DNA of 64,000 nt, taken from Ramazzottius varieornatus (lineage: Eukaryota > Animalia > Tardigrada). The notes under the pieces were generated by a model that was given only the letters and a program-made list of their open reading frames with translations, was not told the DNA's origin and ran no database searches. Positions 27,783 to 50,446 of the stretch are shown in pieces. The first letter of the stretch is position 1, and each line of letters opens with the position of its first letter. The DNA lies in NCBI GenBank assembly GCA_001949185.1, contig BDGG01000001.1:3737324-3801323 (forward strand), given 5' to 3'. The translations under genes were made by a program, and so were the position numbers.

Positions 27783-28296
27783 CTGTGTAATAAAATAGTT
27801 GTCGGAACATTAACAGACACGAAGAGATCGTATTAGCAATCACAGCTGTCATAGCCGAGGATGTCTAAGCTATCCAAGCGCCCTCTGCAGAAGAGAAAAG
27901 TGACTACAGGTGGCACCAGTAGCGCATAAAAACTTGAACAACAGAACTGCACCGAAAGAAGGGTCGAATAAGACAGATGAAAGTTAGCGTGTACAGGAAG
28001 TGAGATGAGCAGAAATTAGTTCAGCAATAGTTCGAAAAGAGAAAGAAGGAAAACCCTGAGAAAACCAGAAACCGAGAACCCAGCCAGAAACCCATCTCCG
28101 AAAAGAAACTGTACGTGGTCGAGAAGGACTACGTCGTCCGATGAATCTCGCCATTAGAAGTGGTCACTGTAAAGACAAAGAGGAGTAGAAAGAAGAGAAG
28201 AAAATGGAGCCGTAGAAAGAAGTGCGCAGTGCGGTGAGGAGCAAGAAAGTGTGAGAAGTGGGGTGAGGGGAAGTAGAAGGTGCCATGCAAGAGTGC

Positions 28297-31200
28297 TCAA
28301 GTTGGTGTTTGGGCAGGTGAAGGATCAATTTTAGAGCGACCTTTGTTGGTGTGCCGGATGGCCATGTAGGCAACTGCTGCAATTAGAGCCACTCCCACGA
28401 TGCATCCAATAACTATCCCAGTTATTTGACCTCCCGTTAATGAGGCGGTGGCAATGGAACCTGCGAAGAGGAGACGGTGAGTATTAGAGGTAATTTTGTA
28501 GGTCATGCGGGATTCTTCGAAACATTATGAGGAAAAGTCAGGGAAATGGGACAACAGACAGATCGCGAGGTAATTACGACTAAAATTAATTATAATCTTC
28601 TGAGTGCTTTCTTCCCTGTTTGCCCAAGAGTAACATTAGGAACCGATAAGCGATGGAAACCGACTCGTCATTATCCCACCATGAGGTGTATGGGACGTGG
28701 GCGAATCGATTGAACAGGATTGTTATCTCAAGTGGCGCACGCTCTCGTAGTCAAAGACGGGAAATGAGCGGCGCCTGGAAAAACGATCCTGTTCAAGTCA
28801 TTTGCCGACGTCCCCTATACTTTTGATGTCTGTAAAATGGTATCCTTGTCTAATCATATTCTAATTCTTATTAATTATTGGTTATATTGATTGACCCAAA
28901 TAGCGAGCCGTGCCTAAATGACCGCACATTCGAGCTCGAGCGAGTTTATCGTCGAAGTGCGGAAAAATTGATTGTAGGGTTGTGTAGCGCGGATGACAGA
29001 CTGACGTGGCGAGTAAATAATTTGGTCGTCCATCCATTCGTCAGATCTCCCACAAGGAAAACACAAACAGTGTTAAACTATGCAATAACCACTTAGGAGA
29101 GAAATGACGCCCTCGCAGTGTTGTGTACTGTGTTGTAGTAGGTCCGCACGACACCAACAAATTAAACAAACTAGACCTGACAGACGGCCCCGTCGCGAGA
29201 TATGTCAAACCGTATGCTCTGTCTGTTCTTTCTGAAAACCCCCACGACGAGTTTCGGTCGTAAAGTGTGCTAAGACTAATGGTCGCGGTTCGAGAATTCT
29301 AAATGACCAGTTCGAACTGCCATACGCATTACCAGCAGACATGTTGGCTTGTCCCAGTGGAACACTTTAGTCGGAGCGAGATATGGATATTAATCAAATC
29401 TGCCACGTTCAATTACCCCACAATCGTCAATACCGACTTACTGGAATATTGCCCGCCTTTTCGTTGTCGAGTGAAAATTTCAAATGACTCAAACCTACAA
29501 CTGAAATTCCCGAAGAGCTGAACTAGTCGGTTCCTCAAGTGGCGCACGTTCTTGTTGATTTTGGCTGGAAGTGTGCGCCACTTGTGAAAGCAGTCCTGTT
29601 CAGGCCATTTGCCAACGTCCCAAATTCTTCCGCTCATTTCCCGTCTTTGACTACGAGAGCGTGCGCCACTTGAGATAACAATCTTTTGTGTGTGCGGTCT
29701 GGTCCTACCAGGCCGGCATTATGCTTTTGAAATCTGGTTTTTAATCGAGATATCTTAGGAGTTTTTATGGCACCGACGTATTGTTCGATTGGGACTTCCA
29801 CGACGTTAGCTCAGTGTTAGCCATGTAAACATGCCAATTCTAGAGAGTTTCTGGAAAATATGTGATCCGTCTCAGAAGCATGCGCCGACAGTTTGGTGCG
29901 ACTTTTATGAGGCTGTGAGATAATCATTATTAAACGGAAGCTTCTATGAAAAGAAATATGTGACAGCTGCGATGCGTCAAATTTGACCTTGTGTCCGCGG
30001 TAATGTGAAACGCTGGTGTCAAGCGGCCACACTAATTTCCTTTCAACCACAAAGGCGTCCACTGGTCGCACAGTGAAACAACACCGCTTATTATTTTCAC
30101 CGAGACAATGTTGCCGCTTTGTGTATGGTATTCAGACTTTTTTGTTCTTAGTTTCGCATCTGTCTGAGGCTTGACAAGTCATCATGTCGTTCTGAACAAT
30201 GACAATATTTATCTACCTAATATAGGACTGATTGTGTGAGAATTGGTTGACCTGTTTTTTCTTTCTGTTTTGATGTTTCATAGGCGGATAACAACACGTT
30301 TTTTATGGCCTTCGTGACGCGTAAGGCACGAGTAGTAACGCTGGTAGCACTTAATTCACCTAACCGAAAGAATTTTCAAAAACTTACAGGCTACTGCTCG
30401 ACCTTCCCTTCCTCACCATCTCCTTCCGCTTCTCGAATCGTAGTCCAGAACGTCTTGAATTGGGAGGGCGGCAAACAATCTCGGGATAGTCGTTATCTCA
30501 AGAGGCGCAGTTGCCCTATCATTGGCCGGGAGAGTACGCCGCTTGAGATGACCATCGTCCTGAGATGGGTCGCCGGCCTCGTAGTTAAAAAGATGCTCCT
30601 TTTTCTCTTTGTGTGAAGATAAGCTCAAGTTGATGAAAAATTTCTCAGCTATTTTAGCTGTCACTAAAGGGGAATTTGTTTATACGTCGGAAGTGTCATA
30701 CGAAAAATGCCCGCGCACGGGTATAGGTTTGGGTTTTGAGTTGTGTCCAGTGGTGAATATGAGCGCGTACGATGGATATGTAAGTGTCAGTTGGAGGCGG
30801 TTTGAATTTCTGGACATGGTAGTCCTTGTGTTGAGGTTGGAGTGTCAGCATCCATTACAAGTAGTGAATGGACTTTGGCGCTTAGCAGTCCATTTTAGAG
30901 CGGAATTTATCAACTCGCCGCGTTTCTGCCCCTGTGATGTGGAGGCATAATGGAATAAGGCACTTATCACCGGGAGCAGACGCCATACTTAAACTTTAAG
31001 CATGCGGGACTGCCGAACATGCATCTGTCCTGCCTGCCATACAGATCCATCTATTGAATGCAAATGACCAACAGTGTCGGACATTAATGAGTCAACAAAT
31101 GTTGCGTGGCTTGTTGACCTTGCAAACTAACCAGGTTGTTCCAGCTTGCGTCCACTGTATGTTCTTCCTTGTTCGAAGGACTCTTGGTTATGTATCACTC

Positions 31201-34200
31201 GCGCCATATGTTGCAAACATGGCTTTTGAATTCGAGCTGATCCAAATTACGTCATATCGTTTCTGGATATTCTTTTGAAGCCTCCAATAAGTCGATCTGA
31301 ATACAATAGCAGACCGGCGTAATGTTATTATGCTTAGAGTACGAGTGAACGAGTTTGAATGCGAGGGCGTTAGGATAACAATCGGGTGATGAAGAGGTGA
31401 TCTTTCTCGTAATTGTTTTAATGACATTTTCACGCTGTATTTCCGGTGGAAAATAATGAGGACAACAGACCTGCCTGGCAGATATGGGAGGTATCGGATA
31501 GCGTAAAGGGAATATTCTTGTTTTCGCTATCGGACGAACGTTTGGCGTTGTCACTCAAAATTCTACCATTGATCGAACAGATTGTTCAGTGTTGAGATTA
31601 TGCGTGACGTAATAAGTGGGCGATTTTTGTTGTTGATGTTATGGGATGGATTAAAAGGGACTCTGTTGAGAATCCCGTTGACCTCGACTGTGAACGTTTG
31701 TGGACCTCGTTCTTCGCAGTCATCAAAGGGGGCCGGCCCAGTGTGAAAAAATTCAGAAAATGCTACTTAGTACTTACACAGGCTTGTTTCTTTGTACGTA
31801 ATAGCCACAATCACGAGCATTAGCGAAGATTATCACAATTTCCTTTTGCCGTTTAAGCTCGTAGACACACATATGGAAGAAATCACAGGCCTTGATCGAT
31901 TATTCAAATTTAAAAAGGGAAGGGTTCTCCGGCTTAAGAAGCCGAAATGGCTCTTGGCATTGCGAGTGCCGAAGAATTACTTCAACTCGTTCGTTATTCT
32001 GGTTCCCTTCCATTTTTCTCTCCACGCTCCTAATGCGTTACGTTCGCAGGCTCACTTTTGGGACAAAGAAAACACTTATAGCAATCACGCCATACACTTC
32101 CGTCACTTACCGTCTTGGTTCATCGAAGCTCCACCGTTCCTGAGTGATTCTGCAAAGACGAAAAGAAGTATGGTCAAGGTGACGTGTTACATGAATGATT
32201 AAAAAAGATAGCTTTACACAAAGAGGTGATTCATGCAGGACCAGGTCATAGGTCACGACAAGGATGGTGCCATGAGACGCCACTATAGTGGGAAAGGCGA
32301 AAAAAGGGAGGAAAGAAATAACGATGTAGGGTGAAGCACGCACCGGAAGTAACACAGAGCCAGAAAAGGTGAAAATGTGTGAGGTCCCTAGCTTAACACA
32401 GTGTGAAGCTCTTTGGCAATTCCTTTCTAAAGTGGTATCGACCTTCCCAGTTCTTCGCCTGAAGAACCTTCAAAATGAAATCTGAGAAAAGCTCAGGTAT
32501 GCGCGATAAGCGTGTTTGGGTTGTTCTTTTGAAATTGATTTCTGGATTCGTTTTCTGGCTTGCGTTCAGAAGAACGTGAGGTACTCGACAAGATAGGCAT
32601 TTATGTTAGAGGAGGAAGACTTGCGAGGACCGAATGCGTGACATGTTACTCGCGAGTGCAAGCAAAGGGACGAGGTGACAGTGGGACAAATATTAATGGG
32701 CACTTGAAAAAAACGTCTGGACGAGTATGGCACGCAACGTTAACCTGTAAGGTCCACCGTCGACCGCAGACCAGCACCAGTAGAAGTAGAAAGATAGAGT
32801 GAAGTAGTGGTAGAAGAAGAAGTAGAGGAAGTGGTAGTAGTAAAGGCGCGAGTGGCTATATGATAATTTAGGTAAAACTAGAGAGTAGACCTCTGATCAC
32901 CGCAATGAGAAAAAAGGTCCGATAGACTTGACCACTTCTCTGGCTCACACCCTTACTTGTCTGAGGCACCACAACCTGTATGGCGATCGAGTTGGTGTTG
33001 GCGCATGTGCCATTAGCGACGGAGGAGCGGCAGTCGATAGTCAAGGGTCCTCGCAGCTGGCTCTCCGTTCCATCCAGTGTGAAGAGGGCGTCTAGAGTTC
33101 GGCGTGTATAGCCACGATCGGCGGCGGACTCTGACAGGTTCTGCCATTGGGGCTCGATACCCAGACCGGGAATGGTCAGCGAAAGACTGGCTTCGGGGTA
33201 GGAGACCGTCGTACAGCGAACCTGAATCTGGCTTCCTCGCATGAAGGAAGGTGTGGCGGAGGAAAGGGAGGTGATGGTTGCGGGAGTGAATGTGTTGTTG
33301 TCGACCACCCGATTACCATCTGACGTACTGTTGATTATGCTCAATTCGACCGTCTCCGGGCAGGCTGAAATAACACCATGATATACTTGACCACACATTA
33401 ATCATCTGATTAGACGACGGTTGTGCGTGCTGTTAGACTGACTTTCGTAAGCAGCTGGCGACGAATTTTACCGCTGCTATAGTTTGAAGTATCACTTCTC
33501 AATCCCTCACGAAAATGACTTCTCAGAATCTAAACTTTGACTTTCATACAGAATTTTCTAATTTTCATTTGCTAGTTCGCCATTTTTGAAGGTGGATGAC
33601 GTACCGACAACTTGTAGCCTTGTCTGAGAGATCACAGGGACATTCCGCGAGGCCGGTGTGAGATCGCAAATGTATGTGGCATCGTCGCGGAACGTGACAT
33701 TTGGTAGACGGATCTGAGGTTGATCCAGGATTGAGAAGGTGACGTTGCGGTCCTTCCACTCGTTCTGTGGCATAGTAATGCGGTGAGGTGGCAGGTCGAG
33801 ATAAGTGAAGAGAATGTAGTCAGTGGACCGTTGGTTCTTAAACCAGCGCAGAGAGTAAACGTCAGATACATTTCCGGTGGAATTTAGCTTGACTTTGTCG
33901 TAGCCGGAACAAGTAATGGTGGCTGCATTTCCCAATATGGCATATATGCTATCCGCACCTGTAACAATAGAGACTGAAGGAAGTGAGCTCCGAGCCGTTA
34001 GAAACGCTGCGATGTTCTGCGCTGCATTTTCAGGGTTCGCGTAAGGAGAGCTGTTAGAAAAGCGTGTGTTCTGGGCGAACCCTGCAACGGGAAACCTTTC
34101 TCAGGTTCTTCTTTTGCCGAACACTTTCACAGGGACTACTTCAGTCGGACCCACTTCTACTCTGTCGTTTAGTGATCGTTTAATGTTTTCGAATTTTAAG

Positions 34201-36368
34201 TGGGCGAGTTTTCCGATTGACTAAGTGTGACATTGAGGGTGATTTTTATTTAATTGAACTAAAATTGGTCTGCCGCTGAAAAAGGTACGCCTGAGCCAAC
34301 CGTGAACTTTGAGCGCATTTTTTGTCTGTGTAATAATGAGTCAAGTGAAGAAAAACAGCAGGTGCTTGACAAAGAGCTCTTTGTGGCACATGAGAAAATA
34401 CGTGAAAAGGAGGAAAAGAGCCTAGTGACAAACATTGCACGCAAGCTGCCTGTAGTTAACGCCCAACTCTTACTTTGCTTGAATGGAGAAAATGAGTGGT
34501 GGACATTGATGGCCACGAATGAATGGCTGGGCCGCGGCGATCCCTCACTGCACTACAAAGTGGCCACAATCCGGCGTTCTGGATGACTAGACTTTATAGC
34601 CAGCACTGGACGTAAACCCAAAAGAGGAAAGTGTTTCAATTACCAGCACCAAGTAGGCAACTTAATGATACTTGGACACGCGACAGTGCCCATCATTGTT
34701 CCCCCTAAACGGCCTGCTAGCCTCCCAGTTGATCTAATCTGTTAGCACGTAACAAGGAACACTATCCAGATATGTAACTAAAATATCTAAAAGGGGAGAC
34801 ATTGCCCTGATAGTTTGGGGATGGGAATTAGGCTCCTAACCAGGCTAAGAGGGACGGAAACTCGCCAGCACTCCATCATGGAACGAACAGAGCAGCTTTG
34901 AATAGTGACCAGCGTCGACCGACACTAATCTCCCCTCGTAGCCGATAATCCCTTCAGTAGCTACCACCACCGTATATTTCATAATCAATAATTAGGATTA
35001 TCGTTACTTATGACTCCATAAGTAAAGACACTCTCCGTTGAAGTCTCCCCGTGTTTTCCTTCAGCGTGCCAATCTTTCGATTATTCGGTGTGGTCGTGGT
35101 CGTGCGCATCGTTCGGATTTGTTCGATATCACTAGTAATAGTGGTAGTCTAGTATCCTCCTCCACGTTTTGAATGGTGTTAATCGAGAGAGATAACGTCT
35201 CTGTTCTGAGCGAATTAAAGCGCGCTCTTTGAAGCTTTTCTCAAGTGGCTCCAGCATGATCGCTTCCCACGCGTTTTACAAGCTAGCCAACTAGGAGCCA
35301 TTTCGCCGCTTTTTTTTGCTACTGTACCCGCCATAACCAAGATCATAATGACCAATATTGCGCGCGGACGTCCCTGCTTGACACCGATTGCGTTGTGATA
35401 CACTTCACGCAATAATTTACGTTGAGAGGGTATTTTGATATCAAATTACAGGCGAAAGTCACAGACGAGCTCGTTTGGGTATTCCCCCCTTATCAACTTT
35501 TTTAAAAATATGTATTACAAATATTGATCGAGTATTTGTTTTCTAACGATTAATATGTGGAAACATAAGTGTTTTCGCAAGTCGAAAAAGCGGGTTCCAG
35601 ATTTTGCCAGCAAGTTGGAACAATATTCACATTTTACACTGAGGAGGAATTTCTGTTCCCATTGTATGCGAATGGGCAGGGTTGTTGTGAGAATTCCACT
35701 GTAAGCTCGAAGGATTATTCGCTGTCCGCCGCTGCGGCGGAATCCAATTAGCTAACGATGGGTAGCCAGCCATAGGATTGAATTCGCCGGTATAATTTTT
35801 TCCGGATCGAATTCATCACAGAATCGAGACGCGGAGAGTTCCATCTCATTCCGGTTTAGCTCCGCGCACGTTGCTTACGGGGTCTCGGTTCATTTGCACA
35901 AAGGCGAACTTTGAATAGGTGAGGCTCATGCAAAAACATTGGCCAGGCGTTCTCTATGTCCTTATAACAAGCAGCGATTCTACACATGGAAAGGTACCAC
36001 CATAGTCTCTGATCTACCTGCTTAAACCCTAGCGCCTGACCCAATTTTTTCCATAACATGGCAGTGGAAAAAGATCGATAATAGTCAGAGCGAAGGATTC
36101 CGCTTTGCATAGGTAGGCTTGCTACAGTATCTGACTATTCTACCTCCACACGCAATCTGTCAGTCAACACCTATGTGTGCCCAGGTATTTTCGGCTTAAG
36201 AGTCTAGGACAATTAAATCCAGCTTTGGCAAAGGCAAAGGGGTCAGTCGCTACAGATCTGTCATGTCACGAATCACGCAATGTGCTTACCTTCAGCCAAC
36301 ATTGAAGTCGAGGAAAACAACATCCATATTAGCGACGTTAGGGATAATGAACGGTAAAGAGCGCCCAT
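28297..36368 (-). CDS. Beaten path (Beat)-like two-Ig cell-surface protein; exons 36368-36290, 34021-33605, 33364-32957, 28460-28297
   Basis: Signal peptide MGALYRSLSLTSLIWMLFSSTSMLAE. V-type Ig with VYSLRWFKN..ILFTY..IRLPNVTFRDDATYICDL (Beat-like LYSVKWYK pattern). Second Ig CTTVSYPEASLSL..IDC. TM helix ITGIVIGCIVGVALIAAVAYMAI. All junctions phase 1. The Ig call is firm; the Beat family call is moderate. Confidence 0.8.
28691..28814. repeat. Palindromic AAGTGGCGCAC-family element (intronic copy)
   Basis: gggacgtgggcgaat..gaacaggattgttatctcaagtggcgcac..aacgatcctgttc..atttgccgacgtccc. Confidence 0.8.
29536..29683. repeat. AAGTGGCGCAC-family hairpin plus a 54-bp inverted copy of 28718-28771
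   Basis: caagtggcgcac..gtgcgccacttg hairpin. 29630-29683 is the exact reverse complement of 28718-28771. Confidence 0.85.
30490..30556. repeat. Palindromic AAGTGGCGCAC-family element (degenerate)
   Basis: cgttatctcaagaggcgca..acgccgcttgagatgacc. Confidence 0.65.
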
Positions 36369-39300
36369 GTTGAATATCCCGTCAGTCCGCCGGCCACACC
36401 AGAAGCCAAAAGTTTCGTCAGAGAAGATCATGGTGGACAGTGATGGGATCACAAGTTGCGCTACTGTATCCTCGCTCACATCTCTCGCTACGGATAGGGA
36501 CACTTGTACTGCCACTCATCCGCTAAATTGAAAGTCATTCGATAAATCACCCCAAAAGTCCACTAGATAATATACAGAATATATACACTTCTGTTGCCCG
36601 ATCACACTCGCCTCCACAGCTCGTACTGCAAACTAGACCGAGGTATTCCAGTACGTTCGCCGCATGAAACGTAAGGCCGACAACACAACGGAAGAGAAAT
36701 AATCGACAAAGATTCGATACACACACATACACACACACCGCGCCTTGACGCGCGCAGGCATTTGCATGGTAGGATACTCAGTATTACCGGCATAAAGAGG
36801 CGGGGCTTCATTGGTATTGGTTGGTTCAACGCGCGCTTTTCTGTGTTCGATATCAAACTGGGGGTATTGTACGATCATGTCAAAGTCTGACAGATCTGCT
36901 TTGGATCGGATAGAGCAGCTTGCTGTGCTAAATTGTTAATGCTGTTCATGTTGATAATAACGTTACCGGGCCGAGCGGCGCTCGTTTCTGGACAGGCCAT
37001 ACAATTTCGCGTGGCAATCTCCCGGAAAGCTATCGTACCGCGGGGTATATTCAGGGTTGGGAGTGAATATGTCTGAACGACCGAGAGAAACAACAGATGT
37101 GATCCAGATTTCAAGCTACTTGAAAACAGGGATAGGGGTTTCATGGAGGCTCAAGTGCGCCGCCAGAATGTGGTTACCTAGGATGAAATGGCCGGTTGAG
37201 TACACACTCCCAAGTGCTTCTGTGTTCTAGTTGGGATGCGTCCGACTTTTCGATGAACTTCAGATGAGACGCGCATGCGAACGATACCTCGCACAAAGGT
37301 TCATCAGATGAAAAACACTTGACTGCAGCTTGCAAGAGTAGAGTTGGAACCGTGCGGTTTTTTGTCTCGTAAGAAGGTGTCATTGGCGCAAGAGTTTCTT
37401 CGCCAAATGCGCACAATTACGGTCAGATTCAGTTAGCTAGAGAGAAAGCCAACCATAATCTTCGAGCTCGACTTATACTCGCATGCGTCGGCCATACAGA
37501 AAATCGAACAACCAGGAACTTTTAAAGTTCTGGGCTAATATTCGTGTGAGGCCCGTGACCACTTCGCAGAAAAGCGTTGGTTAGGTCACCAACTGCCTTT
37601 TCGAGTAGAGTTTTCTTGGCTCGATCTATATTTTAATATTAGTAATGGATTCGGATGACGCAGATGTGAAAGCTGAAAAACGGGAACCTTCCAATAATTA
37701 TCTCAAAGTCAGGCAATCGAGAAGCCCGAGTGTTGTTCGCTTGCACTGTAGCGCCCTCTTGTGGCGAGACAACTGGGCGAAGTGGTGGGAAAGCGAAGTC
37801 TGGACTCTGGACTACGACAAAGTCGACGCACCATAATGACACCGGCAGACGGAGAAAATTATCGTTATGGAGTGACACTTGGCTGTGGAAATGGTCAGCA
37901 GATTGACAATGGCCACTACGTCCAGGCACCAACAGAAGCCACTTTGGCGTATTTTGATGTATGAGAAATATTGTTACTATTTCATGAGTCTGGACGTGCA
38001 GGACTGTTACCTTTCGTGACCACACGACAGCTGGTACAACACATTAGCTCCAAGGACTATAATGTCCCAACGGGAACAACCGTCCATCCCCTGCCACCAT
38101 AATCTTACTCCCACAGGACTTCAATATGGGTTGACTGATGATCGAGTAACTCTATAACGCTCACATTAGAAGTTAGTACTATTGTGATGGCGAAAAATAC
38201 ATGGGCTTCACTGTATGCAGGAAAGAGTCGGCTTTACGAGGCCTTCGCTTGTCATGTCCCTTAATCCATAGGACTAAATTCGTAAATTATTTTTCGATTG
38301 AAGTCATCGACCTTCATGTCTTCTGCCTGGAACGCAGTCAGAAAAGGACGGTGGAAAAATTATTCCCTGAAGAATACGGTTTTCATTCCCCAATGGGAAA
38401 ATAACGCGGAGAAACAAGGTGGGAAACAGGTCGAGAGACCTGGCGAAAAAATGTCATTCCCTGAAGATTAATTTACTGGCGCTGTTCGATGTCCCCGTGA
38501 ACCCCAACCTGCGCACTGTGCAGTCAATTTACGCAGACTGTCGACCATATTGTTTCATCTCTCGATCCCGAGGGTGAATCAATATTGCTTTAGGAGGATC
38601 TTGTCATATTCCCGTCCGCAAATGAGGTCTGTGCTCGTAGGCACTTCACACCACCTGTGATATGTCTCATCCAAGGTTGAAAACCAAAGAACAGAATACA
38701 CAGCGAGGTACTAGAGGCGTAACAGGATATATTTGGGGCGATTTGAGGCCGGATACTCCCCTTCTCAAAAGCTAGGTGGCATTTCCAATGTGCTAAATGA
38801 CTTTCTAGCGCCCTTTTCCCTCATACAGTTACGCAATGAAAGCCAAGAAATCTGCATGTGAATAGTTCATGATGTCGCGCGAGCTTTCGGACATTTTATC
38901 CTTTTTTCCCATGACATTTCTGCTTTCAAGAAGAAAACGACATGCAATCGAGAAATGTCCATAAAGGCATCGAGAAGGCTTTTTCCATAGATGTAATGGA
39001 TTAATCTGGGAAGCTCGCATTGCGAGATGCATTGCTCCAGTCACTCCCATTCTTGCCAGCATTAACCCGTCGACAATGATGCCATTTGGCCAACTCCACC
39101 CATTTTGAGTATGTCGACCAGTGTAGGTCTAATGTTGAACTAATGACTGCAGCGCCGTCTGTGGTGAATGTTAGGTGATCGTTAAAGGATCTTCTTGCAC
39201 TCTTGATGATCGTCAGCTCGTAAGCCTACCAGCTACCTTACGCAGATCCGGTAGTGAAACGTTTGTACGGAAGCTTCATTTTCACTACTGTGTGAAAATT

Positions 39301-42300
39301 CGTTGCTGAGTAGGCCAATCCGATAACCCCATCATCAGACGCGGCACGGTGTTGTCTGTATTTTCTCTTTACTGCCAAACACCAGTTCGATCGTAACCGC
39401 TACACCTGTCTGAGTTTTTTCCACCAGGAAGGCTGCAATCGCGTTCTGCTTCCCGAAGAACCCGTGCCTCTTCCAGCCACAGCTTGCTTATCCATTGGCT
39501 GCTTTTGGGCGTTTCCCGAAGTTTACGTGTTCCTTCGTCCTGGGTTTCTGTTTTACATACTGAGTTTGTCACGGGTTCGGAAATATGTGAAAAATCACAT
39601 CGGAGTTTTCCCTTTCGAGTGTTTGTTGCCGCAGATTCCGTTTTTCCTTGCTGCGCCACAACCATGTTACGCCCACATCCATCGAGGAATTTTAAGTCTC
39701 TTCTGCTCCCTTTCATCGGTAAGCAAAAGCTTGTCCAATGTAGAAGTGAGAATAAGCGTGTAATCCATTGATACTTGAAAGTCATCTTATGAACGAACAC
39801 TAAAGGCACTGGAATTCGTGGGAAAGTGTTTTCGCTTTTCTTGGCCTTTCCCTTGAGGTGTCGTGCAGGGTTGGCCATTTGCATGTCTGTGTTCAAAATC
39901 TGAGAGTATTTTCTTTGCACGTAATTGGGTTGTTCGAATCGTATCCAAAAGAGGGAATATTTTTACGACAATAGATTCCGTGCCTGTCTGCCCAGGGAAG
40001 CAGCTTGGCCTAGTTACAGGTGGGGACTGGGATGTTGGGAATAGCGCAAAGTCAGCATAAATATCGATTCTGTAAAGCGGTTTTGTGTCGATTGCATCGC
40101 CAAAGAAAGCATCACGTAAGGCAACCATACTAATCCCATGCAGATCAGTTCGTTCAGAACACTGGGAAACCAAAGCTAAGCTGGGATGTCCAGGACCAAA
40201 TCTAATTAGTGGTGGCACGCTCTGTGTTGCAGCCAATAACTGCCAACTTGCCCGGAGAAAAATGCCCCATTTGAAGAGCTGGACAGGATGAATAATTGAC
40301 TTGTCTGCGATTCGTTAAACTTTGTCAGATTAAGGCCAATTTCCACACTTTTGCTTTCTGACTCAATCACCCTGTTAGCTTTTTCCTGGCTGAATGGGAA
40401 ACACTTCACCGAACGATCTGAATATTTTGCGACAATTTTTCCTCAAATACGTTGGTGTGAAGAAAGTTTTCGTTGTTGATTTGGTTCGCTTTGCTCGATA
40501 CGTTTGGCTTGACGGAAGATGAGTGATGTGGCGGTATACCGTATAGCAAGTGATGCAAAGACGGTCAGTTACGCTAGAAAGAGGTAATTATTGACTGTGT
40601 CAACAGCTGAAAAGGAGAGGCACATGAAGATCAGGGTTAATACGCACATTACTCAAAAGCCCATGTTTGTTTTTTACGCAATATGGACAATGGACGCAGT
40701 GTTTTTCTCAGCGCTTAATGTAGCAATCGATTTCCTCCATTGCATACGCTGAATGATTTAACGAAACTTGAAACTGCGGGGGAAGATCATCACGCAAATT
40801 GCCGATCTCCGGAATAATAACGAGGAACCGGTAAACAGCGTTCGCTTGCTTTGCACGCACCTGCGTACATGGATACCATGGTAGTGGGGCGACATGGTGT
40901 ATGCAGGTGGGCGGGATATTTCCTATATACGCCTCTTAGGCACTGTATATGGGCCATGAAGATTAGAGTAACGATGGGATGCTTACTGCATACCAAAAAT
41001 TGTGAGCTGAGGAAGGCTTTGTAGCAAGCCAATTTTAAACTGAGCTTATCTCTTGATTACCTGTTGTAATGAATGTGTGAGCATGTACTGGTCAAGACGT
41101 CGGGTCATGTCTGTGTTGGTTCTCGCGCCTAATGCGACAATCAATCCATCTTTTAACAAGACGTCGGACAATAGGATTATCACCCTTTCACCCACTCATA
41201 ACCGCATCTTTCATCACTCTGCCTCAATAGCCACGATAGACTGCCGTTATCTCCATTCCCATTCAAAACGTCAGCCACTTCTTGATATGATTGCTAACTT
41301 GTAAATTAGCGCTTGACTAAGCTAGACCAGCTGGCTCGCTTGACCGCATCGGTCAGTTACTAGTGCTAGTCTCCTTTGTTCGTCAAGACTTGTCAGGAAG
41401 CACATGGAGCTCTTCAACTTCCGTAACTTCTGCACTCGAGTCGAGAAACCTATAATTTATGCATATCGTAAATGTGCTAAAAACTTTTCTGGAAATCGTT
41501 CGCTGGGCGAGAAGTTCGGTCGACTGACAAACTTCTGGGCGGAAAGAAGGCTGCATGTCAAAGAACGAAAAATTGAGTTGTTAATTGAATGCCGTGGCTG
41601 GCTTAATGATTATGTTGGTTAATTGGGCATTGCACCGAGAATTGGGAGGTTTGATTTTCGAAGACTAGTTTCCCAGCTAGATGACGCAAGACTGAGTCGT
41701 AAATCAATCGCGAAAAGCTGGTTTTTATGATTGATAAGATGGCCAACTTAATCGCTCCAATAAACATATACTCTTTAATCGGCAAAGTGGGTGTTTTGGA
41801 CAGTCATGCAGTCCTTCGAACTCAGCTCCTGCAAAATTGTAAATGTCTGGGAAAATAGGCCAAGAAACGGTAGACAAGGAGGAAAATTGCAGTTGGGAGG
41901 GCGCATTATGATGGAATAATGGGCGGCTGGCAGCGCTTTGTGTCTGTCAGATATGTTGACATTCATTATTTGCGTAATTTGTGTTCGTGGATGCGTGCGT
42001 CCGGTGGAGCCATGGACAATTATGGTTCATTGTAGCGTAGAACGTTGAGAAGAGCTTCTTTGGTCGGCAAAGAAAGCCAGAAGACCATCTTCTCCTCCCC
42101 TGCATCTCGAGCTCACTTCAATATCACTCTTTTCAAGTGTCCGCTCTGACTGATGGGCCAACGTGTGAAAACGAACATCTTCTCTTTCTCCGTTGAGTCC
42201 GAAATATGGCCGTGAACCGTGACGATCAGATGTGCGAGTCAAGAGTCGCCATCGACCGACCTGCATGCAGACCATACCTCTGAACTTCTCTGGTGCCTGT

Positions 42301-44805
42301 TTAAACTCTCTTTACAGAATCGGAAGTGATATGGGAAAAAAAATCCATTTTTACAAGCTAGTTCAACATTCATTGTCTGCGTGATGACAATCATCACTAG
42401 CGAGGACAGTACAAGAGCGAGACAATCAGTCGATCGGAAGCAGCGATCACGATTCTTTTACAGTTATTTGAGCCGTAACTCTTCTCGATCTTTGTCGTCG
42501 CAATCATTCATTCATGGCCTTTCTTACCAAGCCGCGATGAGGCACGTTCGACATTTCAACTGAGAGCATGATGGATGGGCACGATGAAATTTTTGCTTGT
42601 TTTCCGTGGGTGGTGCCGTGTGGTCCGATCGGCAGACACGCCACTGTGAACACTGTCGGGGAAGTTTGTTTGTAATGAAAACCTATTCCCGCTTAATCCA
42701 CGCCCCGACACTTTGCTCCTCTTGGTCCATCTGATACGCACAACATGCGTCTTAGTGGCGGTTCACTGGTGTTATAAGAGCTCCATAAAGAACGTCGTAT
42801 ATTTTTACTGCCCCTGCTCCGTCGTGGTTATGAAGTTGCACCACTTACCGCGAAACGCACATTTAACTTCGTTCAACACCGTTTTCGCCGCTGATCTTAG
42901 TGCTTACCCTCTTTGTCAAAGTTTTATTGTAAATAGCGAACTTGACTGCATAAGTGAAGAGCTCGTATGGCGGCAAGAAGTTAGCCGAGCATCTCAATAG
43001 AAAACGCGGTAACGAATTCCGCCGAAGAAGGAGATAATAAAATTTTCTCCAAGTATTGAATAAAGTCAAGTCAAAACCTATTGTGTAAAAGAAGATCTGA
43101 TATGGCTGAATTCGCAAAACAATACTGAGTGAACAGAGTACAATATCGTATGGAAGGAAATGAAACAAAAACCAACGAGCGGAATATGTTTGTGTCGAAA
43201 GGGTCTTGATGGCTCATTTCCGGTCTTTCAAGTTGCGGACAGTGCGTTGATCGACAAAAAAGGTTTGCCATAAGCTCGGCAAACAACCTTTATTCTTCCG
43301 TTTATTTGAGAAGAAAAAAGAACTGATGGGGCCGGGAATCTGGAAGTTTGAAACTAGTTACGCCATATTACACGAGTCTTTGAGCTGCTCTACTTGGCAA
43401 TTCCCATGCGGGTCTATTTGGCTTTGAAATGGAAAATCGCCCTGCGCAACTAATATTCTTTAGTCCACTATGTTACTGTGTCGAAGTGTTTATGTTTGTG
43501 ACGCTTCTGGCCACACACGCGGGCTATGCAAATACCTCCAAAATTCAATAACATCAAAGACAAATATGGGGTTTTTTGTCCTGTTCACTGAAAAGAACTT
43601 TGTGCACGTGTCCGAACCGGCATTGCACTTCTAAACATCAACATTTGACCGTAGGAATGATTAATTGCCGGCAGTCGACCCACCTTAGTACTTATCCGCT
43701 TGTAAATTCTGGTTTCCGAAAACATGTCATATTCGATTAGGGATTTTATCCATTGAGATTGGCGACACACTGTCTGCTTTCAGGATCATTTCGTTCGATA
43801 ATTTACAGTTGAAGCTATCTTTTCTTCGATCGGACATGAGGAGACAAAGTCAACATCTTTGAGTGGGGTAAATTTGAAGAAGGGCGTGGTCATCGTGAGA
43901 AAAAACTTCACGGTTTCCTGCAGCGCGCAAAACAAAGTTTAGGAAGTATGCGAGTTTCTTTACGCTTTATTGGCCACATGTAGTAGCGTTCGATGGGGTT
44001 ATTCACTCAACAAGAACGAATAAAGCAATATTGTTTCTGGTTTTTTTTCGAGTAGCAGAACTGGCTTGGTGTAAACCGGACATTCCGTGTGGGCGCCACT
44101 TAAGCGTTTGTTTATACTTGTTTATAATTCTTGCAAGTCCGTCTTGATACTTTCATGAGGTGCTGGGAAGACATGTGATCACGTGACGTCGGAAGTGACC
44201 AATCGGAAGTTCGGTCCGAGTGTGCGAAAGTAGTGCAAAGGCGCGGTTCGTGTCGGTGCACTGCCGCTCTGCTCGATCAAGCGGCGCATGTTGATGTACT
44301 GTACAGAATATGCGCGACTCTATGTGGGTAGTGACTGTGCTCTTACAGTGTTGTCGTTGGCCTTGGGAAGGACATGCTTGTATGATGCCGGGGTTGGCCA
44401 GACAAGCGTGCACTATGTATTCGGCGCGATGAGGTTGCCGCCAACTTATAATTTGCCTTGTGTTATCATGAGATTTGTTCCCCTTGATTACGTTCTGGTC
44501 AGACATACTGACGACGGCTAGCATACCATACCATTCCATGCCGACCACTACATTCTATTTTTGTGTTAATTTCGGGAAAGCGAGACCTTTCTCAGCTTCC
44601 TACGCGTTTCTCGGTGAGACGCTGCTGCTGTTGTTGTTGTAATGGGCTGCGCGTGTTGACCAAATCAATGAATTACAATTCTCTTGTTGGACCATTGTGG
44701 AAAATTAGCATATCAAGTGGCTGTGGCCACTTTTGAAGGATGTTTGTTTCATATTTGCGCCATTCGATCTATCGGTAGTGAGCCTGGGCAGTGTTGAAAT
44801 CGGAC

Positions 44806-47800
44806 ATGGCGTTGCATCTGTTATCTGGTGTCTTTGTAGCTGTCATCCTCTTCTGGTCCACCTGCGCACATGCGGCCACTTCTCTCAACAGTCTGGCACT
44901 AGTTCTCAACGGACCGGACGTGGCCAACTATGGATCGACCGTTGTCTTTAAGTGTTCCTGGCAGGCTGACGATCTCGTCTTCCGGATATTATGGCGAATA
45001 CAGCTGGCAGGCTCCTCTGTCCCGCTGGAATACACCCTCAAGAATGCAGCACAAAGTGAGCCTGTGTCATTAAGTAACGCCGGCAGCGATGGTCCGCTAC
45101 AGGGCGAGGCTAGTGTGGACACCAGGAATAACTTCTCAACACTGACACTCCGGAACGTCTCCTTTGTCGATGGACTCTACACGTGTGTCGTCTCGTCAGT
45201 AACGGCGGAGAAGCTGACCAACAAGTCTCTCAGAGTTGTCGGTAAGCAAAACTCTCTTGTCAGAATATTTCGCTAGTTTTCAAAATATTCTTAGAGTACT
45301 TCGAAATTCTTCGAAACGAGAATATTTGAACAAGGAAGTAAATCGAGTTAGGAATAGACTGGACGAGTGGACAATAAATCAATAGGAGAGTTGTGGAAGA
45401 GCGCCCGGAGCTGTGGGTTGGATTTCGTTTCAGCTGGGCGCTTGAATCTGTTATCGCTTTAATACGATGAAGATTTGCGTCGAGCTGATTAACATCAGAA
45501 GCTGCCGAAGATTTTACGAGGCCGGCCGGCGTTATGGCCGCAGCTGCTCCGGAGCAATCTCGTAAAATTTTCTCCATTCGGCCTTCTCCAAAGGAATATG
45601 GCTGTTTGGTTGGGAAGTTGTAACCATAAAAGCATCCAGAAAGTGCACTGTTAACGGGCGGAGATCGCAGCTCGTTACAGTCAGATCAGTGGACTAATCG
45701 GAAAGATCTTTGGCGGAGCAATGGCGGAATGTGCTTATTAACTGCCCAATGCTCGGAGGAAATAAACAGAAACAGATAGAGAAGAGATAGCCAAGCGCCT
45801 TTTGGGGCGAACTCAATCAATCGATGATGATTCGGGCAATTTGTGGGGAAATTGTCTTAATCTGTTACACTACTTTGTGGATTAAATTGAGCAAAGTTCC
45901 GCATCAGTGACCACTAAGCAAACATATATCTTCCAGTCCGCAGCTCATCTATCAAGTTTTGGCGTATTCGGCCACTGTCCTTCCGCCATGCTCTGTAATA
46001 TGCATGTTGTTTGTTTGCAGCTCCACCTGATCAAATCATCTCCCGAGTGAACCTCACGCACAATAACAGTAGTTTCCTGACCAATGGCTCAACCATCGGA
46101 CCGTATCTGGAAGGGACCGGTTTCGAGATCAACTGCTTTGTCGCTTGGTCCAGACCACCGGCCAAGATTATCTGGTACAGGAAAGACCTCCAAGGTAATT
46201 AAAAATTCAATATGCCACGCCCATCATGGTCAAACAAAAATGGAAAAGAAAGCTGGCAATTACATTCGGCACCACTTTCATAAACCTGCATACACGCTGA
46301 TCATTCTGAATCGATGGCCCAGTGTACGCAGGTTGTTTGCCCGGAAATTTTGCCCGGCTTTTGGCAGATCTTCCGGGAAGTATTGAGATGAATACTGTTC
46401 GATCAAATAATCCATAATTCTACCGGTTTAAGCTTCTGACGACAAGTTTATAGTTTTTCCGATTAATTAAAATTCTTTATGGAGAAGTGTGGAGTGATTG
46501 CCGCTGGTGGAGAGCGTGATTAGGAACTAATGAGACATCCGACATGGCGCTTCGGACCAAAATTCGCATGTCAGATACTTGTTGTAGTGTGACGGAGTGA
46601 AGAGTGAAGACGATCAATCTGGTGGTTCTCGGGGAATAATGACAGGTTCTTGCACCGCAATTTTAGGTCAGTTATACCCTATGGAAAGCCAGAGTGGACC
46701 ACAGAAGCAGCAGATGGAAGCAAGTGGTGGCTGGCGGGTCAGTCGTTCCATGTACTTCCGGCTGGATTCACGACGTTTAATGGGAAACGTATTGATTTGT
46801 CAAGCGGAAAACGAGGCCACAAGTCAGCCCGTCCAGACCGCTTATCGCTTGGATATGTTAGGTAAGATGAGGATGACTGATGGGATTTTAACTCGGCTCG
46901 TGCCGGATGTGATATCAGGTCGCTCATCAATCTGTCGTTGCTTTTTTCTCCCTCTAAACAGTTCCGCCAACCAATATTAGCCTGTCCAGTCTCAATGGCG
47001 TCCAGCTACGCGAAGGACTATTGTACCAAGTCAACTGCACAGTCTGGAACGCCAAACCCTTCGCCACCATTACTTGGACGCTCGACAGGGAACCCATTAG
47101 CCGCTTCATCGTCAATGATACGCTGCCGGGAGAAACCGAGGGAACTTTCTCCACTCGCAGTGTCTTCACTTACAGCGCGAACCCTGATGACAATGGCAAA
47201 GCACTTAGCTGCATTGCCACACAGGAGGTCCTCACGGTCCAAAGGCGAGGAATGTCCAACAGTACCATCCTCAACGTTGTCTGTAAGTCAGAACAAAAAG
47301 CATTGGTAGAAATCCACCCCAACCCAATAACGAAAACATCGTAGATAAGTGGGGAAAAACTACAAGTAATTCGAAGAGACATTGTATTTCAAATCGCTGT
47401 ACGAAAATATGGGATGCCAAAGTAAAAACCAAAATATTTCATTCGTTTGAAACACACCGGCCTTTTTCAAAAGTGTTTAACGGCATAACAGATTGTCCGA
47501 GTAGTACGAAAGCTGGGTCTGTGTAATGTGACAGTTTGTCGTATCCATTTTGCGTGCTGAATTTTATTTTGATATGTTTCCGAATGTTATAAACAGATGT
47601 AAGGGTTGTCAATAAGTGCAAAGAATATCAACAAGTCGTGGTAGATTATTGCCGTTACTTCTGCAGATTCACCGAGGAATGTCATGACATCCAAGTCTCA
47701 CTTGTCACTAGTGGAGTGGCGTCTGCCCGAAACGGACACGCTCGGCGGCATCAATTGCACGGCAGATGCAAATCCTCCAGCTCAATATGTTTGGATGTTC

Positions 47801-50446
47801 AAAGAATCTGTGATTGCCACTGGTCCAACACTGGTCTTTGGCCGGAATGTCACCTTAGACGATGCCGGAGACTACTTCTGCATCGCGTCCAACGAAGTTG
47901 GCCAAACCAACATCAGCATGCAAGTTGATGTCCAATGTAAGTTTTTCCAATTTCCGGCTAAGCAAAATTGAATATAGAACCACTAAATGGGAGCTGGGCT
48001 AACAGAACGTGCAAGATCGTTGTCTCGAGCGGCGCACTCTTCCAGTTGATAACAATGGGATCGTGCGCCACTTATGGCGGCGATCTTGTACGTTTTTTCC
48101 CCACCTCATAAATGATTTGATTGAACTGAAAACACGAGACTTTTTCTTTGAAAGTTTTTTTTGTTAGTTTTGCGTAACCTGTTGCGTCATCGGATAGTGC
48201 CGATATGGTCAGTGAAATCTTTCAGGCGGTCAAATATAAATCAGCGTCGGTAAAGTGGCGTTGAAGTGCGCGTTAGAAGAGTCAAGCGCTGTATGATAAG
48301 CAATGGCGGAGATTGTTGATAAAGCTATCTTTAATAACATCTTCCCCTCTTTGACTGTTGGTAGATCGGCCCTACTGCTCCCGCTGTGCAAACGCCAGTG
48401 ATCCATGTTTGATCGGTGCGGCAATGGAGCAATCTCAGAGCGTCACTTGTGACATGGATGCCAGTCCCGCCGCGGACCTTGTCTACATGTGGAATGTCCC
48501 TCTCAACGAGACAACAACCGACAACGCTTTGGCCATACCAACCAACCTCGACACATCCTCATCATCATCAGCGTCGATTAATTACACGGTAAGATCCTCC
48601 GATGACTACCACGCGCTAGCCTGCTGGGCGCGCAACAGCATCGGCCTGTCCGAGCAGCCCTGCTATTTCCGTGTGGTGCCTGCGGGCCCGCCACACCCAC
48701 CGGAAAATTGCTCCATCATCACTGTGATGAGTTCAGGCTTCAGCCTGAAGTGCCGGCCAGGCTTTGACGGTGGACATCCGCAAAAGTTTGTCATGTCCAT
48801 TTGGGCCACCGGACAAGACGCCGATAACAGTGCCTTGTCATACAAGATATCGCCCTCCACCTCCAACAAGGCCCTCAGAAGTCAAGACGCGGTGGTCATG
48901 CCCGATGTTCGCGAGAATGTCTTCCCGGAATGGCTGGAGAAGGGACTGCAAGGCGGGAAAGACTACAGGGTGAAGATTGTCTCGAGAAACGAGGCGGGGA
49001 ACTCGCAACCGGTCTTCTTGGCTCTTCGCACTCTCAAGCCGGATGACTCGACCATAGGCTTGTCGACGACCGTCGTGGCGGCCATCGCGGGAAGCCTGGG
49101 TGGTTTCGCCTTCCTCATCCTCTTAGCCAGCGTTGCTTTCCTCTGTGTCAGAAGGAGAAAGAAGGGCGAATGTAAGTCCAGAAGGGAAAATACCTACTCG
49201 TAGTTGTTGTTGACGATGCGCCTGTTGATCTCGGTTCATGTATCTTATCATGCATATTTCACTACGGGAAAATTGTACGATACAAGTATTTTACTGATAT
49301 TTTCATGGAAGTCATGGTCTGACGAGGCAATAAAATTTCGCTCTTGGTAAATGGTGATGGGTCTCTTCTTCGGTGTGTTCTGTAAGTGTGTGGTTGAAGT
49401 ACGGTACTCTAACATAACGGTGTCTATCTACTGTAGTGAAAATTACTCAACCGGAAAGTCTTCGCTTGGGTAAGTCAGACTGGGAGTGGACAGTGCTGTA
49501 TGGTCCTAATGACTGCTTGTGGTACCCCGAACTATCGTAGTTCTCGCATGCTTGCTATTGCCTATCGCTACCAGTAGTTTTTCTTACCCTGTAATCAACA
49601 CCTACAACGACCCACAATTTCCGCATGTCATTTTCTATGTATGTTCTCTTCCGCGTCCCGCCTTCTCATCTCTCGGTTGCTTGCTTGCTCCATATATGCG
49701 TAGCTGAATCTGATGGTCAACTTTCGATACCCTGTTTTTTTGTTGTACTTTTGACCGAATGTCGGTTGTCGAGTATGTCCCGGGTCGCGGGGTCTCCCAC
49801 GGTTTAGTCTCCGAGCGATACTCGGACTGGCTACCTCTAATACTTTGTCGTTGTAGCGGTTGGTTCCGGGTCGGAAACCCACTCGAATAACAGCAGCAAC
49901 GATGGCAGCAAATCGGAACTGGTCAAAGGACCCAATAGTAACGGTGTCGTGAACGTTACCGCCAGAAGGCCGGATACGCTAACTTCAAAGAGCGCTGACT
50001 CGAATGGCAATGCGTCGGGCAATGGCTCAAACGGTCATCTCTACCACCAGACCGTTATCCAATCCAAGAAGGACCATCCAGTCACGGAAGTGACGTATAC
50101 TCGGGCATGTGACCTGCAAAGCAAGAAGCTTTCTGTCAAGGTATGGTAGGCTCGCCAATTCGGCAAATCGCTAAGTATTTCTGGAGCTAATTTGTGTTCA
50201 CTTTTGTAGCCGGTTCTTGGACCAAAACCTCCCTTAGTGAGCGGGAATGGAGTCGTGGTGGCAAGACCCGTCGACCGTACCCAGTACGCTGTTATTGACG
50301 TCTCGAAAAGCGGGAAGAGAGCAGCGCCGAGACCCAGTGAGGATATGGTAGCTCATGATGGCTCGCCCTTGCCCAACAGAACCAACGATGATATGCTGCA
50401 GCAGGAACCCAAGAATGGCATCTTGAAAACGGTCGCCGTAGTATAG
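44806..50446 (+). CDS. Sidestep (Side)-like protein: signal peptide, 5 Ig, FN3, TM, cytoplasmic tail; 9 exons
   Basis: Exons approx. 44806-45241, 46021-46194, 46667-46861, 46962-47282, 47667-47937, 48365-49171, 49437-49469, 49857-50140, 50210-50446 splice in frame. Side-family Ig5-FN3 signature LACWARNSIG..PCYFRVVPAGPP..NC..CRPGFDGGHPQKF. Confidence 0.88.
48011..48091. repeat. Palindromic AAGTGGCGCAC-family element (intronic copy)
   Basis: caagatcgttgtctcgagcggcgcac..gtgcgccacttatggcggcgatcttg. Confidence 0.7.

What the first reader, a model, noticed from the sequence alone, without database searches (positions are those of the whole stretch)
28297..50446. Head-to-head Beat-like / Sidestep-like gene pair: a linked receptor-ligand module
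Seen: a 2-Ig gene on the minus strand (ATG 36368) and a 5-Ig+FN3+TM gene on the plus strand (ATG 44806) diverge from an 8.4-kb region with no convincing gene, the longest gene-free stretch in the window. Known: Beaten path and Sidestep families are heterophilic partners in Drosophila axon guidance and synaptic matching. Inference: a cognate pair kept in physical linkage, possibly an ancestral arrangement from before the insect expansions, sharing regulatory DNA or co-inherited as a recognition haplotype. I know of no description of such linkage, but I cannot search the literature.
Basis: partly seen in the sequence, partly recalled or inferred. Interest (0 to 1): 0.85.

Follow-up and report, generated by a model that had tools for sequence, protein, structure and literature searches.

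The report
Linked tardigrade Ig receptor gene pair
Two neighbouring, oppositely oriented tardigrade genes encode cell-surface immunoglobulin-type proteins built like the insect nerve-wiring pair Beat and Sidestep and predicted to bind each other, but no sequence search links them to those families and the larger one lacks Sidestep's key binding residues.

Summary
In Ramazzottius varieornatus, RvY_01298 (minus strand) encodes a V-set Ig, a second Ig, a membrane helix and a conserved tail. It lies head-to-head, 8.4 kb away, with a plus-strand gene of 8 exons and 907 codons: five Ig, one FN3, a membrane helix and a roughly 180-residue low-complexity tail.

A structure-prediction test of the two first Ig domains supports binding (ipSAE 0.72, best of 3 controls 0.00). 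It uses the CC'C''FG faces, as in Beat-Side and nectins.

Family membership is not shown:
- Searches of billions of proteins with the small gene found tardigrade relatives only.
- The large gene has T-C-V-V-S where Side has its binding-critical R-C-R-V-D.
- The small gene keeps only conservative versions of Beat's key residues (R/F for K61/Y63, Asp for the invariant Glu).
- Fold searches return only generic V-C2 receptors.

The pair sits in an Ig-gene-rich stretch of the contig, so adjacency alone is near chance.

Verdict: a probable cognate heterophilic Ig pair of a tardigrade-restricted or very divergent lineage. Beat/Side orthology and "ancestral linkage" remain open. The scan had not noted this on other DNA.

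The parts
27607..36431 (-). RvY_01298: type-I membrane protein with signal peptide, V-set Ig1, C2-like Ig2, TM helix and short tail; three annotated isoforms (412, 368, 366 aa)
   Evidence: Protein ids P0016, P0008 and P0015 named by NCBI/UniRef; tblastn mapping
36288..36431 (-). Exon 1: annotated start at 36431, in-frame ATG at 36368, signal peptide
   Evidence: hydrophobic core LSLTSLIWMLFSSTS, helix 23-40 in the model
33605..33958 (-). Ig1 exon (V-set), phase 1 at both ends; predicted binding domain
   Evidence: Pfam V-set E 7e-07; splice sites read; interface residues listed
32957..33364 (-). Ig2 exon (C2-like, with an extra conserved Cys pair: ACPETV and NGTC)
   Evidence: No Pfam hit, but beta-sandwich at residues 170-297 with pLDDT 80-90, aligned to V-C2 ectodomains at Z 11-12; conserved in 3 species
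32109..32150 (-). Small stalk exon
   Evidence: tblastn of P0008
28297..28461 (-). TM exon; read through to the stop at 28297-28299 in isoform -2, spliced near 28333 in isoform -1
27607..27780 (-). Last exon of isoform -1, encoding the conserved tail ending ...VTFVDVSALL
   Evidence: Matches the C-termini of the Hypsibius and Paramacrobiotus orthologues
36432..44805 (.). 8.4-kb spacer between the two divergent starts; no recognisable gene
   Evidence: transcription not tested
44806..45241 (+). Plus gene exon 1: signal peptide and V-set Ig1 (predicted binding domain)
46021..46194 (+). Exon 2: first half of Ig2 (C2-set)
46667..46861 (+). Exon 3: second half of Ig2
   Evidence: phase-1 junctions...LICQAENEA F strand
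46962..47282 (+). Exon 4: Ig3 (CD80-like C2-set)
   Evidence: Pfam C2-set_2 E 9.7e-09; best PDB hits SYG-2 at 4.3e-07 and Kirrel1 at 0.007
47667..47936 (+). Exon 5: Ig4
   Evidence: Pfam Ig_2 E 3.8e-10; generic I-set/C2 PDB hits
48365..49171 (+). Exon 6: Ig5, FN3 and the TM helix with juxtamembrane RRRKKGE
   Evidence: Weak fn3 hit (E 0.022); Atlas neighbours are all Ig+fn3 adhesion molecules; FN3 and TM nearly invariant in orthologue fragments
49857..50140 (+). Exon 7: S/N/G-rich cytoplasmic region
   Evidence: no Pfam family
50210..50446 (+). Exon 8: end of the cytoplasmic tail, C-terminus ...KTVAVV, stop at 50444-50446
   Evidence: no Pfam family

Best explanation
The locus holds two single-copy immunoglobulin-superfamily genes of a tardigrade-restricted, or very divergent, lineage, transcribed away from each other.

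Shown:
- One encodes a small type-I membrane protein: V-set Ig1, C2-like Ig2, TM helix and a conserved tail.
- The other encodes a large one: V-set Ig1, four more Ig, one FN3, TM helix and a tail of about 180 residues of low complexity.

Inferred:
- They are cell-surface recognition or adhesion molecules that bind each other heterophilically.
- Binding is through the CC'C''FG faces of their first Ig domains, with a mainly hydrophobic core (F59, L62, V132 of the large protein against Y82, L101, L103, I108 of the small one).
- A peripheral Glu135-Arg85 contact is also predicted.

This is the design used by Beat-Side, nectins and Dpr-DIP. Whether the pair is orthologous to Beat and Side is not established.
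For: Gene models and domains.

Copy number: both Ig1 exons have no paralogue at E <= 0.01 in the genome.

Complex prediction:
- ipSAE 0.72, 0.71 and 0.72; best of 3 controls 0.00.
- The runs agree in at least 88% of their contacts, and the partner's pLDDT is at least 83.
- The mark was reached by 51 of 78 solved complexes and 2 of 108 mismatched pairs.
- On eukaryotes it was reached by 39 of 65 solved pairs with no like complex among older structures, and by 2 of 126 unrelated pairs.

Interface:
- The contacts lie on the C, C', C'' and F-G elements of both domains. This is the face used in the Beat-Vc/Side-VI crystal structure (PMC12258940).
- In the large protein the predicted interface is better conserved than the rest of Ig1: 15/19 against 48/102 identical in the most distant orthologue.
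- All N-glycosylation sequons of both Ig1 domains lie outside the predicted interface (read).

Conservation: orthologues of both genes exist in other tardigrades.
Against: - The three controls were unrelated, apparently non-Ig proteins. V-set domains commonly pair through this face, so the high score may reflect likeness to solved V-V dimers rather than specific binding.
- Homodimer and other-IgV controls could not be run.
- The interface of the small protein is not more conserved than the rest of its Ig1.
- AlphaFold2 alone folds the large protein's Ig1 poorly (pLDDT 54.5).
- There are no expression, synteny or binding data.
- Adjacency of two Ig genes is roughly what chance allows in this Ig-gene-rich region.
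Confidence: 0.5

Rival explanations
1. The pair are the true, highly diverged, single-copy tardigrade orthologues of Beat and Side, still linked as in a panarthropod ancestor.
For: - The architectures match the invariant family layouts: 2 Ig + TM, and 5 Ig + FN3 + TM + long unstructured tail (PMC12258940; PMC5578738).
- The small protein has VYSLRWFK where Beat-Ia has LYSVKWYK, so the binding-critical K61 and Y63 are replaced conservatively by R85 and F87.
- It has an acidic residue (Asp) after the F-strand Cys, where Beats have Glu.
- R85 lies in the predicted interface.
- Tardigrades are close relatives of arthropods, and ticks have Beat- and Side-like genes.
- The E <= 0.001 cut-off of the 1.84-billion-protein search needs about 41 bits, so a 30-40-bit Ig match would not have been listed.
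Against: - phmmer of Ig1 against 1.84 billion representatives gave 6 hits, none recognisably an arthropod Beat.
- The full-length orthologue against 5.8 billion proteins gave tardigrades only.
- Atlas neighbours are fasciclin-3, nectin, MUC18, butyrophilin and A33, not Beat.
- The large protein has Y-T-C-V-V-S-S (V, L or S after the Cys in orthologues) where Side has Y-R-C-R-V-D-F. The Arg is invariant in Sides, and R190A/R192A/D194A abolishes binding.
- The Beat Glu-Side Arg core salt bridge therefore cannot form.
- The predicted core is hydrophobic, whereas the Beat-Side core is polar.
- No Beat or Side entry appeared in PDB sequence or fold searches, though their presence in the copy is unknown.
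- In Drosophila the side genes are not clustered.
Confidence: 0.2
2. They are two functionally unrelated Ig adhesion genes that merely happen to be neighbours in an Ig-gene-rich region. On this reading the predicted complex is a generic V-set front-face pairing, and each protein has other partners or binds itself.
For: - At least 150 Ig exons in several dozen loci genome-wide, with about eight Ig loci between 3.07 and 3.79 Mb of contig C1.
- With some 50-100 Ig genes among roughly 14,000-20,000 genes (gene count from my own knowledge), about half an adjacent pair is expected by chance.
- The two Ig1 domains show no special relatedness.
- An 8.4-kb spacer is too long for a classical bidirectional promoter.
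- The controls were not Ig domains.
- 7 of 44 blindly drawn neighbouring gene pairs also pass that test.
Against: - The score of 0.72 is well above the 0.34-0.59 range of the mismatches that passed the calibration, and distant cousins of true partners did not pass (0 of 84).
- The interface segments of the large protein (DDLVFRILWRI, EYTLKN, SSVTAEK) are invariant across tardigrade orthologues at 51% overall identity.
Confidence: 0.3

Closest known systems
Beaten path (Beat) / Sidestep (Side) receptor-cue families of arthropods
   Same: - Same domain layouts: 2 Ig + TM, and 5 Ig + FN3 + TM + long unstructured tail with a hydrophobic C-terminus.
- Ig1-Ig1 contact through the CC'C''FG faces (predicted here, crystallographic there).
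- The Beat-like C-strand motif and the acidic residue after the F-strand Cys are kept conservatively in the small protein.
   Different: - No detectable sequence homology.
- Side's R-C-R-V-D binding motif is absent.
- Asp instead of the invariant Beat Glu.
- A hydrophobic rather than polar predicted core.
- Single copy of each gene rather than 14 and 8.
- The genes are adjacent here, whereas Drosophila side genes are not clustered.
Nectin / SynCAM (CADM), B7/butyrophilin, CD166, RAGE and SYG-1 type V-C2 ectodomains
   Same: The model of the small protein aligns to these over both domains (VIA Z 10.8-12.2; Foldseek E about 1e-10). Several of them form Ig1-Ig1 front-face dimers.
   Different: Sequence identity is only 10-19%. 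All rows are tied, so no single family stands out. Nectins have three Ig domains.
Nephrin / Kirre (SYG-2 / SYG-1, IRM) heterophilic pair
   Same: Ig3 of the large protein is a CD80-like C2-set domain whose best solved relatives are SYG-2 (E 4.3e-07) and Kirrel1. Nephrins also carry one membrane-proximal FN3.
   Different: Kirre proteins have 5 Ig and no FN3. Nephrins have 8-9 Ig. The genome has separate Kirre-like and nephrin-like loci.
Genomically linked receptor-ligand pairs, such as Dictyostelium tgrB1-tgrC1 (PMC12142906) and, from my own knowledge, human CD2-CD58 and the SLAM cluster
   Same: Two neighbouring genes encode membrane proteins that bind, or are predicted to bind, each other.
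   Different: tgr genes are highly polymorphic allorecognition genes. Here both Ig1 domains are conserved between species and nothing suggests polymorphism. CD2/CD58 arose by duplication, whereas these two Ig1 domains show no special relatedness.

Membership tests
Beat (Beaten path) | Two N-terminal Ig domains followed by a TM helix or GPI anchor | tested here: met
   V-set Ig1, second beta-sandwich and TM helix in the model, two-domain alignment to V-C2 structures
Beat (Beaten path) | Residue after the F-strand Cys is always Glu (PMC12258940) | tested here: not met
   Y-I-C-D in Ramazzottius, Hypsibius and Paramacrobiotus. Asp is a conservative change but not the invariant residue.
Beat (Beaten path) | C-strand residues K61 and Y63 of Beat-Ia, needed for Side binding (motif LYSVKWYK) | tested here: inconclusive
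   VYSLRWFK, with R85 and F87 at those positions. The change is conservative, but W[YF]K is common in Ig C strands.
Beat (Beaten path) | Detectable sequence homology to arthropod Beats | tested here: not met
   Searches found tardigrade proteins plus one generic 1528-aa multi-Ig protein. Atlas neighbours are not Beat. A match below about 41 bits would not have been shown.
Side (Sidestep) | Invariant ectodomain of five Ig and one FN3, then a TM helix | tested here: met
   Exon reading, Pfam, Atlas. Ig5 and FN3 are not confirmed by a structure model.
Side (Sidestep) | Arg always follows the F-strand Cys; R190, R192 and D194 (Y-R-C-R-V-D-F) are required for Beat binding | tested here: not met
   Y-T-C-V-V-S-S; V, L or S after the Cys in orthologues. 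No G.Y.CRVD Ig motif anywhere in the genome.
Side (Sidestep) | 200-400-residue unstructured intracellular region ending in a PDZ peptide | tested here: inconclusive
   About 180 low-complexity residues with no Pfam family. The C-terminus is -T-V-A-V-V, against -N-A-E-V in Side read from the published primer. PDZ binding was not tested.
Side (Sidestep) | Detectable sequence homology to arthropod Sides | tested here: inconclusive
   Exon-wise searches found tardigrade fragments only. The tool sees only proteins of 0.55-1.75 times the exon's length, so full-length Sides were never candidates.
Nephrin / Kirre (IRM) | CD80-like C2-set domains in a 5-Ig (Kirre) or 8-9-Ig + FN3 (nephrin) ectodomain | tested here: inconclusive
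   Ig3 hits SYG-2 at 4.3e-07 and C2-set_2, but the domain count fits neither. Other loci carry stronger C2-set_2 hits.

The most novel reading that the evidence does not exclude
This is the undivided, single-copy ancestral Beat-Side module of Panarthropoda. On this reading receptor and cue began as head-to-head neighbours, and the insect families of 14 Beats and 8 Sides arose after the linkage was broken. The charged Glu-Arg core of the insect interface would then be a later innovation on an originally hydrophobic Ig1-Ig1 contact.
Probability: 0.15. Interest if true: 0.8.

Novelty: new variant of a known kind. Interest (0 to 1): 0.5.

Why it matters
Reviews state that no Beat or Side orthologue has been reported outside arthropods and that the origin of these wiring families is unclear (PMC10084454). 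My searches found no paper on tardigrade Beat or Side.

A tardigrade pair with exactly these two architectures, predicted to bind Ig1 to Ig1 and encoded side by side, would be one of two things:
- the first outgroup view of how the Beat-Side system began; or
- an independent, convergent invention of the same design.

Either would be useful for understanding how heterophilic Ig recognition pairs arise. The case is also experimentally tractable: one gene of each kind, in a small nervous system.

As it stands the finding is two uncharacterised Ig genes plus one in-silico binding prediction, so the claim is modest.

Tried and rejected
Sequence and fold searches that gave nothing specific:
- PDB sequence searches with both Ig1 exons, the full small protein and both family profiles gave nothing significant and no Beat or Side entry. 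I could not tell whether the Beat/Side structures are in that copy.
- Foldseek and VIA on the small protein's model gave only tied generic V-C2 hits.
- The AlphaFold2 model of the large protein's Ig1 was too poor (pLDDT 54.5) for a meaningful fold search, which returned only TCR and antibody V domains.
- ESM Atlas gave generic IgSF neighbours for both proteins.

Paralogy between the two genes:
- Rejected. BLASTP E was 1.5 and the hhalign probability was 6%.

Motif scans of the genome:
- YRCRVDF, Y[ST]VKWYK and G.Y.CRVD gave no Ig hit. The two hits were a chitin-binding-type Cys motif and non-coding sequence.

Spacer:
- The 175-197-aa ORFs at 39.3-40.3 kb have no Pfam family and no other copies in the genome. 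ORFs over 120 aa also turn up across the window, often overlapping on both strands, so I treat them as non-coding.

Synteny and expression:
- Two metagenome scans found no tardigrade contigs.

Step left out:
The joined protein was never built or searched, so no full-length search of that gene was possible.


Full report
**Source and setting.** The window is G000:C1:3737324-3801323 of a 55.8-Mb, 200-contig assembly. Proteins it encodes are named Ramazzottius varieornatus RvY_01298 by NCBI and UniRef. Earlier notes of this scan also call the genome R. varieornatus.

**The minus-strand gene.**
- Stop-to-stop translation shows a signal-peptide exon, a V-set Ig exon, a second Ig-like exon and a TM exon on the minus strand.
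- Pfam gives V-set for 33561-34100 (29.9 bits, cut-off 26) and nothing for the second exon.
- A phmmer search of the Ig1 exon against 1.84 billion representative proteins returned six hits.
- Those hits led to full-length orthologues: Paramacrobiotus metropolitanus LOC129588523 (396 aa), Hypsibius exemplaris BV898_08359 (414 and 434 aa), and the window's own RvY_01298 in three isoforms of 412, 368 and 366 aa.
- tblastn places the exons at 36431-36288, about 33958-33605, 33364-32957, 32150-32109 and 28461-28300, plus a last exon at about 27780-27610.
- The last exon encodes a tail (…ISHPKAITAY…VTFVDVSALL) conserved in all three species.
- The AlphaFold2 model (mean pLDDT 69.6) shows two beta-sandwiches (residues about 50-165 and 170-297, the second at pLDDT 80-90) and a TM helix.

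**The plus-strand gene.**
- The ATG at 44806 opens a signal peptide and a V-set domain that ends at a phase-1 donor at 45241.
- Reading the splice sites gives exons 46021-46194, 46667-46861, 46962-47282, 47667-47936, 48365-49171, 49857-50140 and 50210-50446.
- Together with exon 1 these sum to 2724 nt, that is 907 codons plus stop, in one frame.
- Ig2 is split by an intron.
- Ig3 is a CD80-like C2-set domain (E 9.7e-09) and Ig4 an Ig_2/I-set domain (E 3.8e-10).
- Exon 6 carries Ig5, an FN3 (weak Pfam hit, E 0.022; motif PPHPPENC…GFDGGHPQKF…DYRVKIVSRNEAGNS) and the TM helix.
- The ESM-Atlas neighbours of exon 6 are all Ig+fn3 adhesion molecules.
- Its FN3, TM and juxtamembrane parts are almost invariant in orthologue fragments.
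- The tail is about 180 residues, S/N/G-rich, without a Pfam family, and ends -TVAVV.
The joined protein was neither built nor searched.

**The spacer.** The stretch 36432-44805 has:
- no Pfam family in its ten longest ORFs;
- no internal repeats;
- no Rfam family or tRNA;
- only one copy in the genome.

**Is the adjacency more than chance?** Hardly.
- Ig_3 alone matches at least 150 exons in several dozen loci, and contig C1 between 3.07 and 3.79 Mb holds about eight Ig loci.
- One of these is a gene of at least 7 Ig + FN3 + TM, 30 kb before the window.
- About half an adjacent Ig-gene pair is expected by chance genome-wide.
- The two Ig1 domains are not recent paralogues.

**Do they bind?**
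- The verdict was that the model supports binding; it does not show it.
- ipSAE was 0.72, 0.71 and 0.72, and the best of 3 controls was 0.00.
- The runs agree in at least 88% of their contacts, and the partner's pLDDT is at least 83.
- The mark was reached by 51 of 78 solved complexes and 2 of 108 mismatched pairs. On eukaryotes it was reached by 39 of 65 solved pairs with no like complex among older structures, and by 2 of 126 unrelated pairs.
- Contacts fall on the C, C', C'' and F-G elements of both domains. This is the face used by Beat-Vc/Side-VI, nectins and Dpr-DIP (PMC12258940).
- The predicted core is hydrophobic (F59, L62, V132 against Y82, L101, L103, I108), with E135 next to R85.
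- In the large protein the interface residues are more conserved than the rest of Ig1: 15/19 against 48/102 in the most distant orthologue. In the small one they are not.
- All sequons of both domains lie off the interface.
- Caveat: the controls were unrelated proteins, not other V-set domains, and front-face V-V dimers are common in solved structures. The pass may show likeness rather than specificity.

**Are they Beat and Side?**

Points in favour:
- The architectures fit.
- Beat-Ia's C strand reads LYSVKWYK, deduced from the published mutagenic primers. RvY_01298 has VYSLRWFK.
- The residue after the F-strand Cys is acidic.

Points against:
[quoted passage not shown] Here it is Asp in the small protein and Val, Leu or Ser in the large one.
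- Side's Y-R190-C-R192-V-D194-F, whose triple mutation abolishes binding, is Y-T-C-V-V-S-S here.
- No such motif exists anywhere in the genome.
- Sequence searches found tardigrade relatives only. For the large gene these were length-limited exon searches.
- PDB sequence and fold searches gave generic V-C2 receptors and no Beat or Side entry.
- Ig3's best solved relative is SYG-2/nephrin.

The review literature says no Beat or Side orthologue is known outside arthropods. I found no paper linking tardigrades to these families.

**Verdict.**
- The 'cognate pair' idea gains real but purely in-silico support.
- The family assignment is unproven, and for Side it fails a defining residue test.
- 'Ancestral linkage' and 'recognition haplotype' are untested, and the conservation of both Ig1 domains argues against a polymorphic locus.

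Noticed in passing
window 27607-28461 (-): RvY_01298 has three annotated C-terminal variants. One splices to a conserved tail ending …VTFVDVSALL. Two stop soon after the TM helix, at 28297 by reading through the intron, or after a short alternative end. The tail (ISHPKAITAY…FVDxSALL) is conserved in three tardigrade genera and may be a docking or PDZ-type motif.
   Followed up: partly
window 32957-33364 (-): Ig2 of the small protein carries an extra conserved Cys pair (VVACPETV at its start, ANGTC near its end) besides the canonical pair. This is reminiscent of the extra disulfide of CTX/JAM-type C2 domains (from my own knowledge).
   Followed up: no
window 49060-49171 (+): The TM helix and juxtamembrane segment of the large protein (TVVAAIAGSLGGFAFL…CVRRRKKGE, with small-residue AxxxG and GG motifs) are nearly invariant in a fragment that is only 63% identical overall. 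This suggests a constrained intramembrane contact.
   Followed up: no
G000:C1:3704000-3708470 (-), about 30 kb before the window (L003/L006): A gene of at least 7 Ig + FN3 + TM (nephrin-like?) with a V-set Ig1 (…GDYYCEISLP) and a C2-set_2 domain. Its FN3 shares the GFDGG.PQKF motif with the plus gene (tblastn E 1e-05).
   Followed up: partly
G000 whole genome: CD80-like C2-set domains (PF08205) match at only four loci: C1:7241559, C5:96046-97129, C1:3707359 and the plus gene. Contig C1 between 3.07 and 3.79 Mb is unusually rich in Ig genes.
   Followed up: partly
protein P0004 (Paramacrobiotus metropolitanus LOC129590703): A 157-aa protein with a signal peptide and a single Ig1 of this family (40% identity), on another contig. 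It has Cys, not Asp, after the F-strand Cys. Paramacrobiotus therefore has a second, possibly secreted, family member.
   Followed up: no
window 39314-40314, both strands: A cluster of unusually long ORFs (197, 175, 149 and 124 aa) in the spacer, with no Pfam family and no other copies in the genome. They are probably compositional, but transcription was not tested.
   Followed up: partly
window 23086-23135: A run of 50 N (assembly gap).
   Followed up: no
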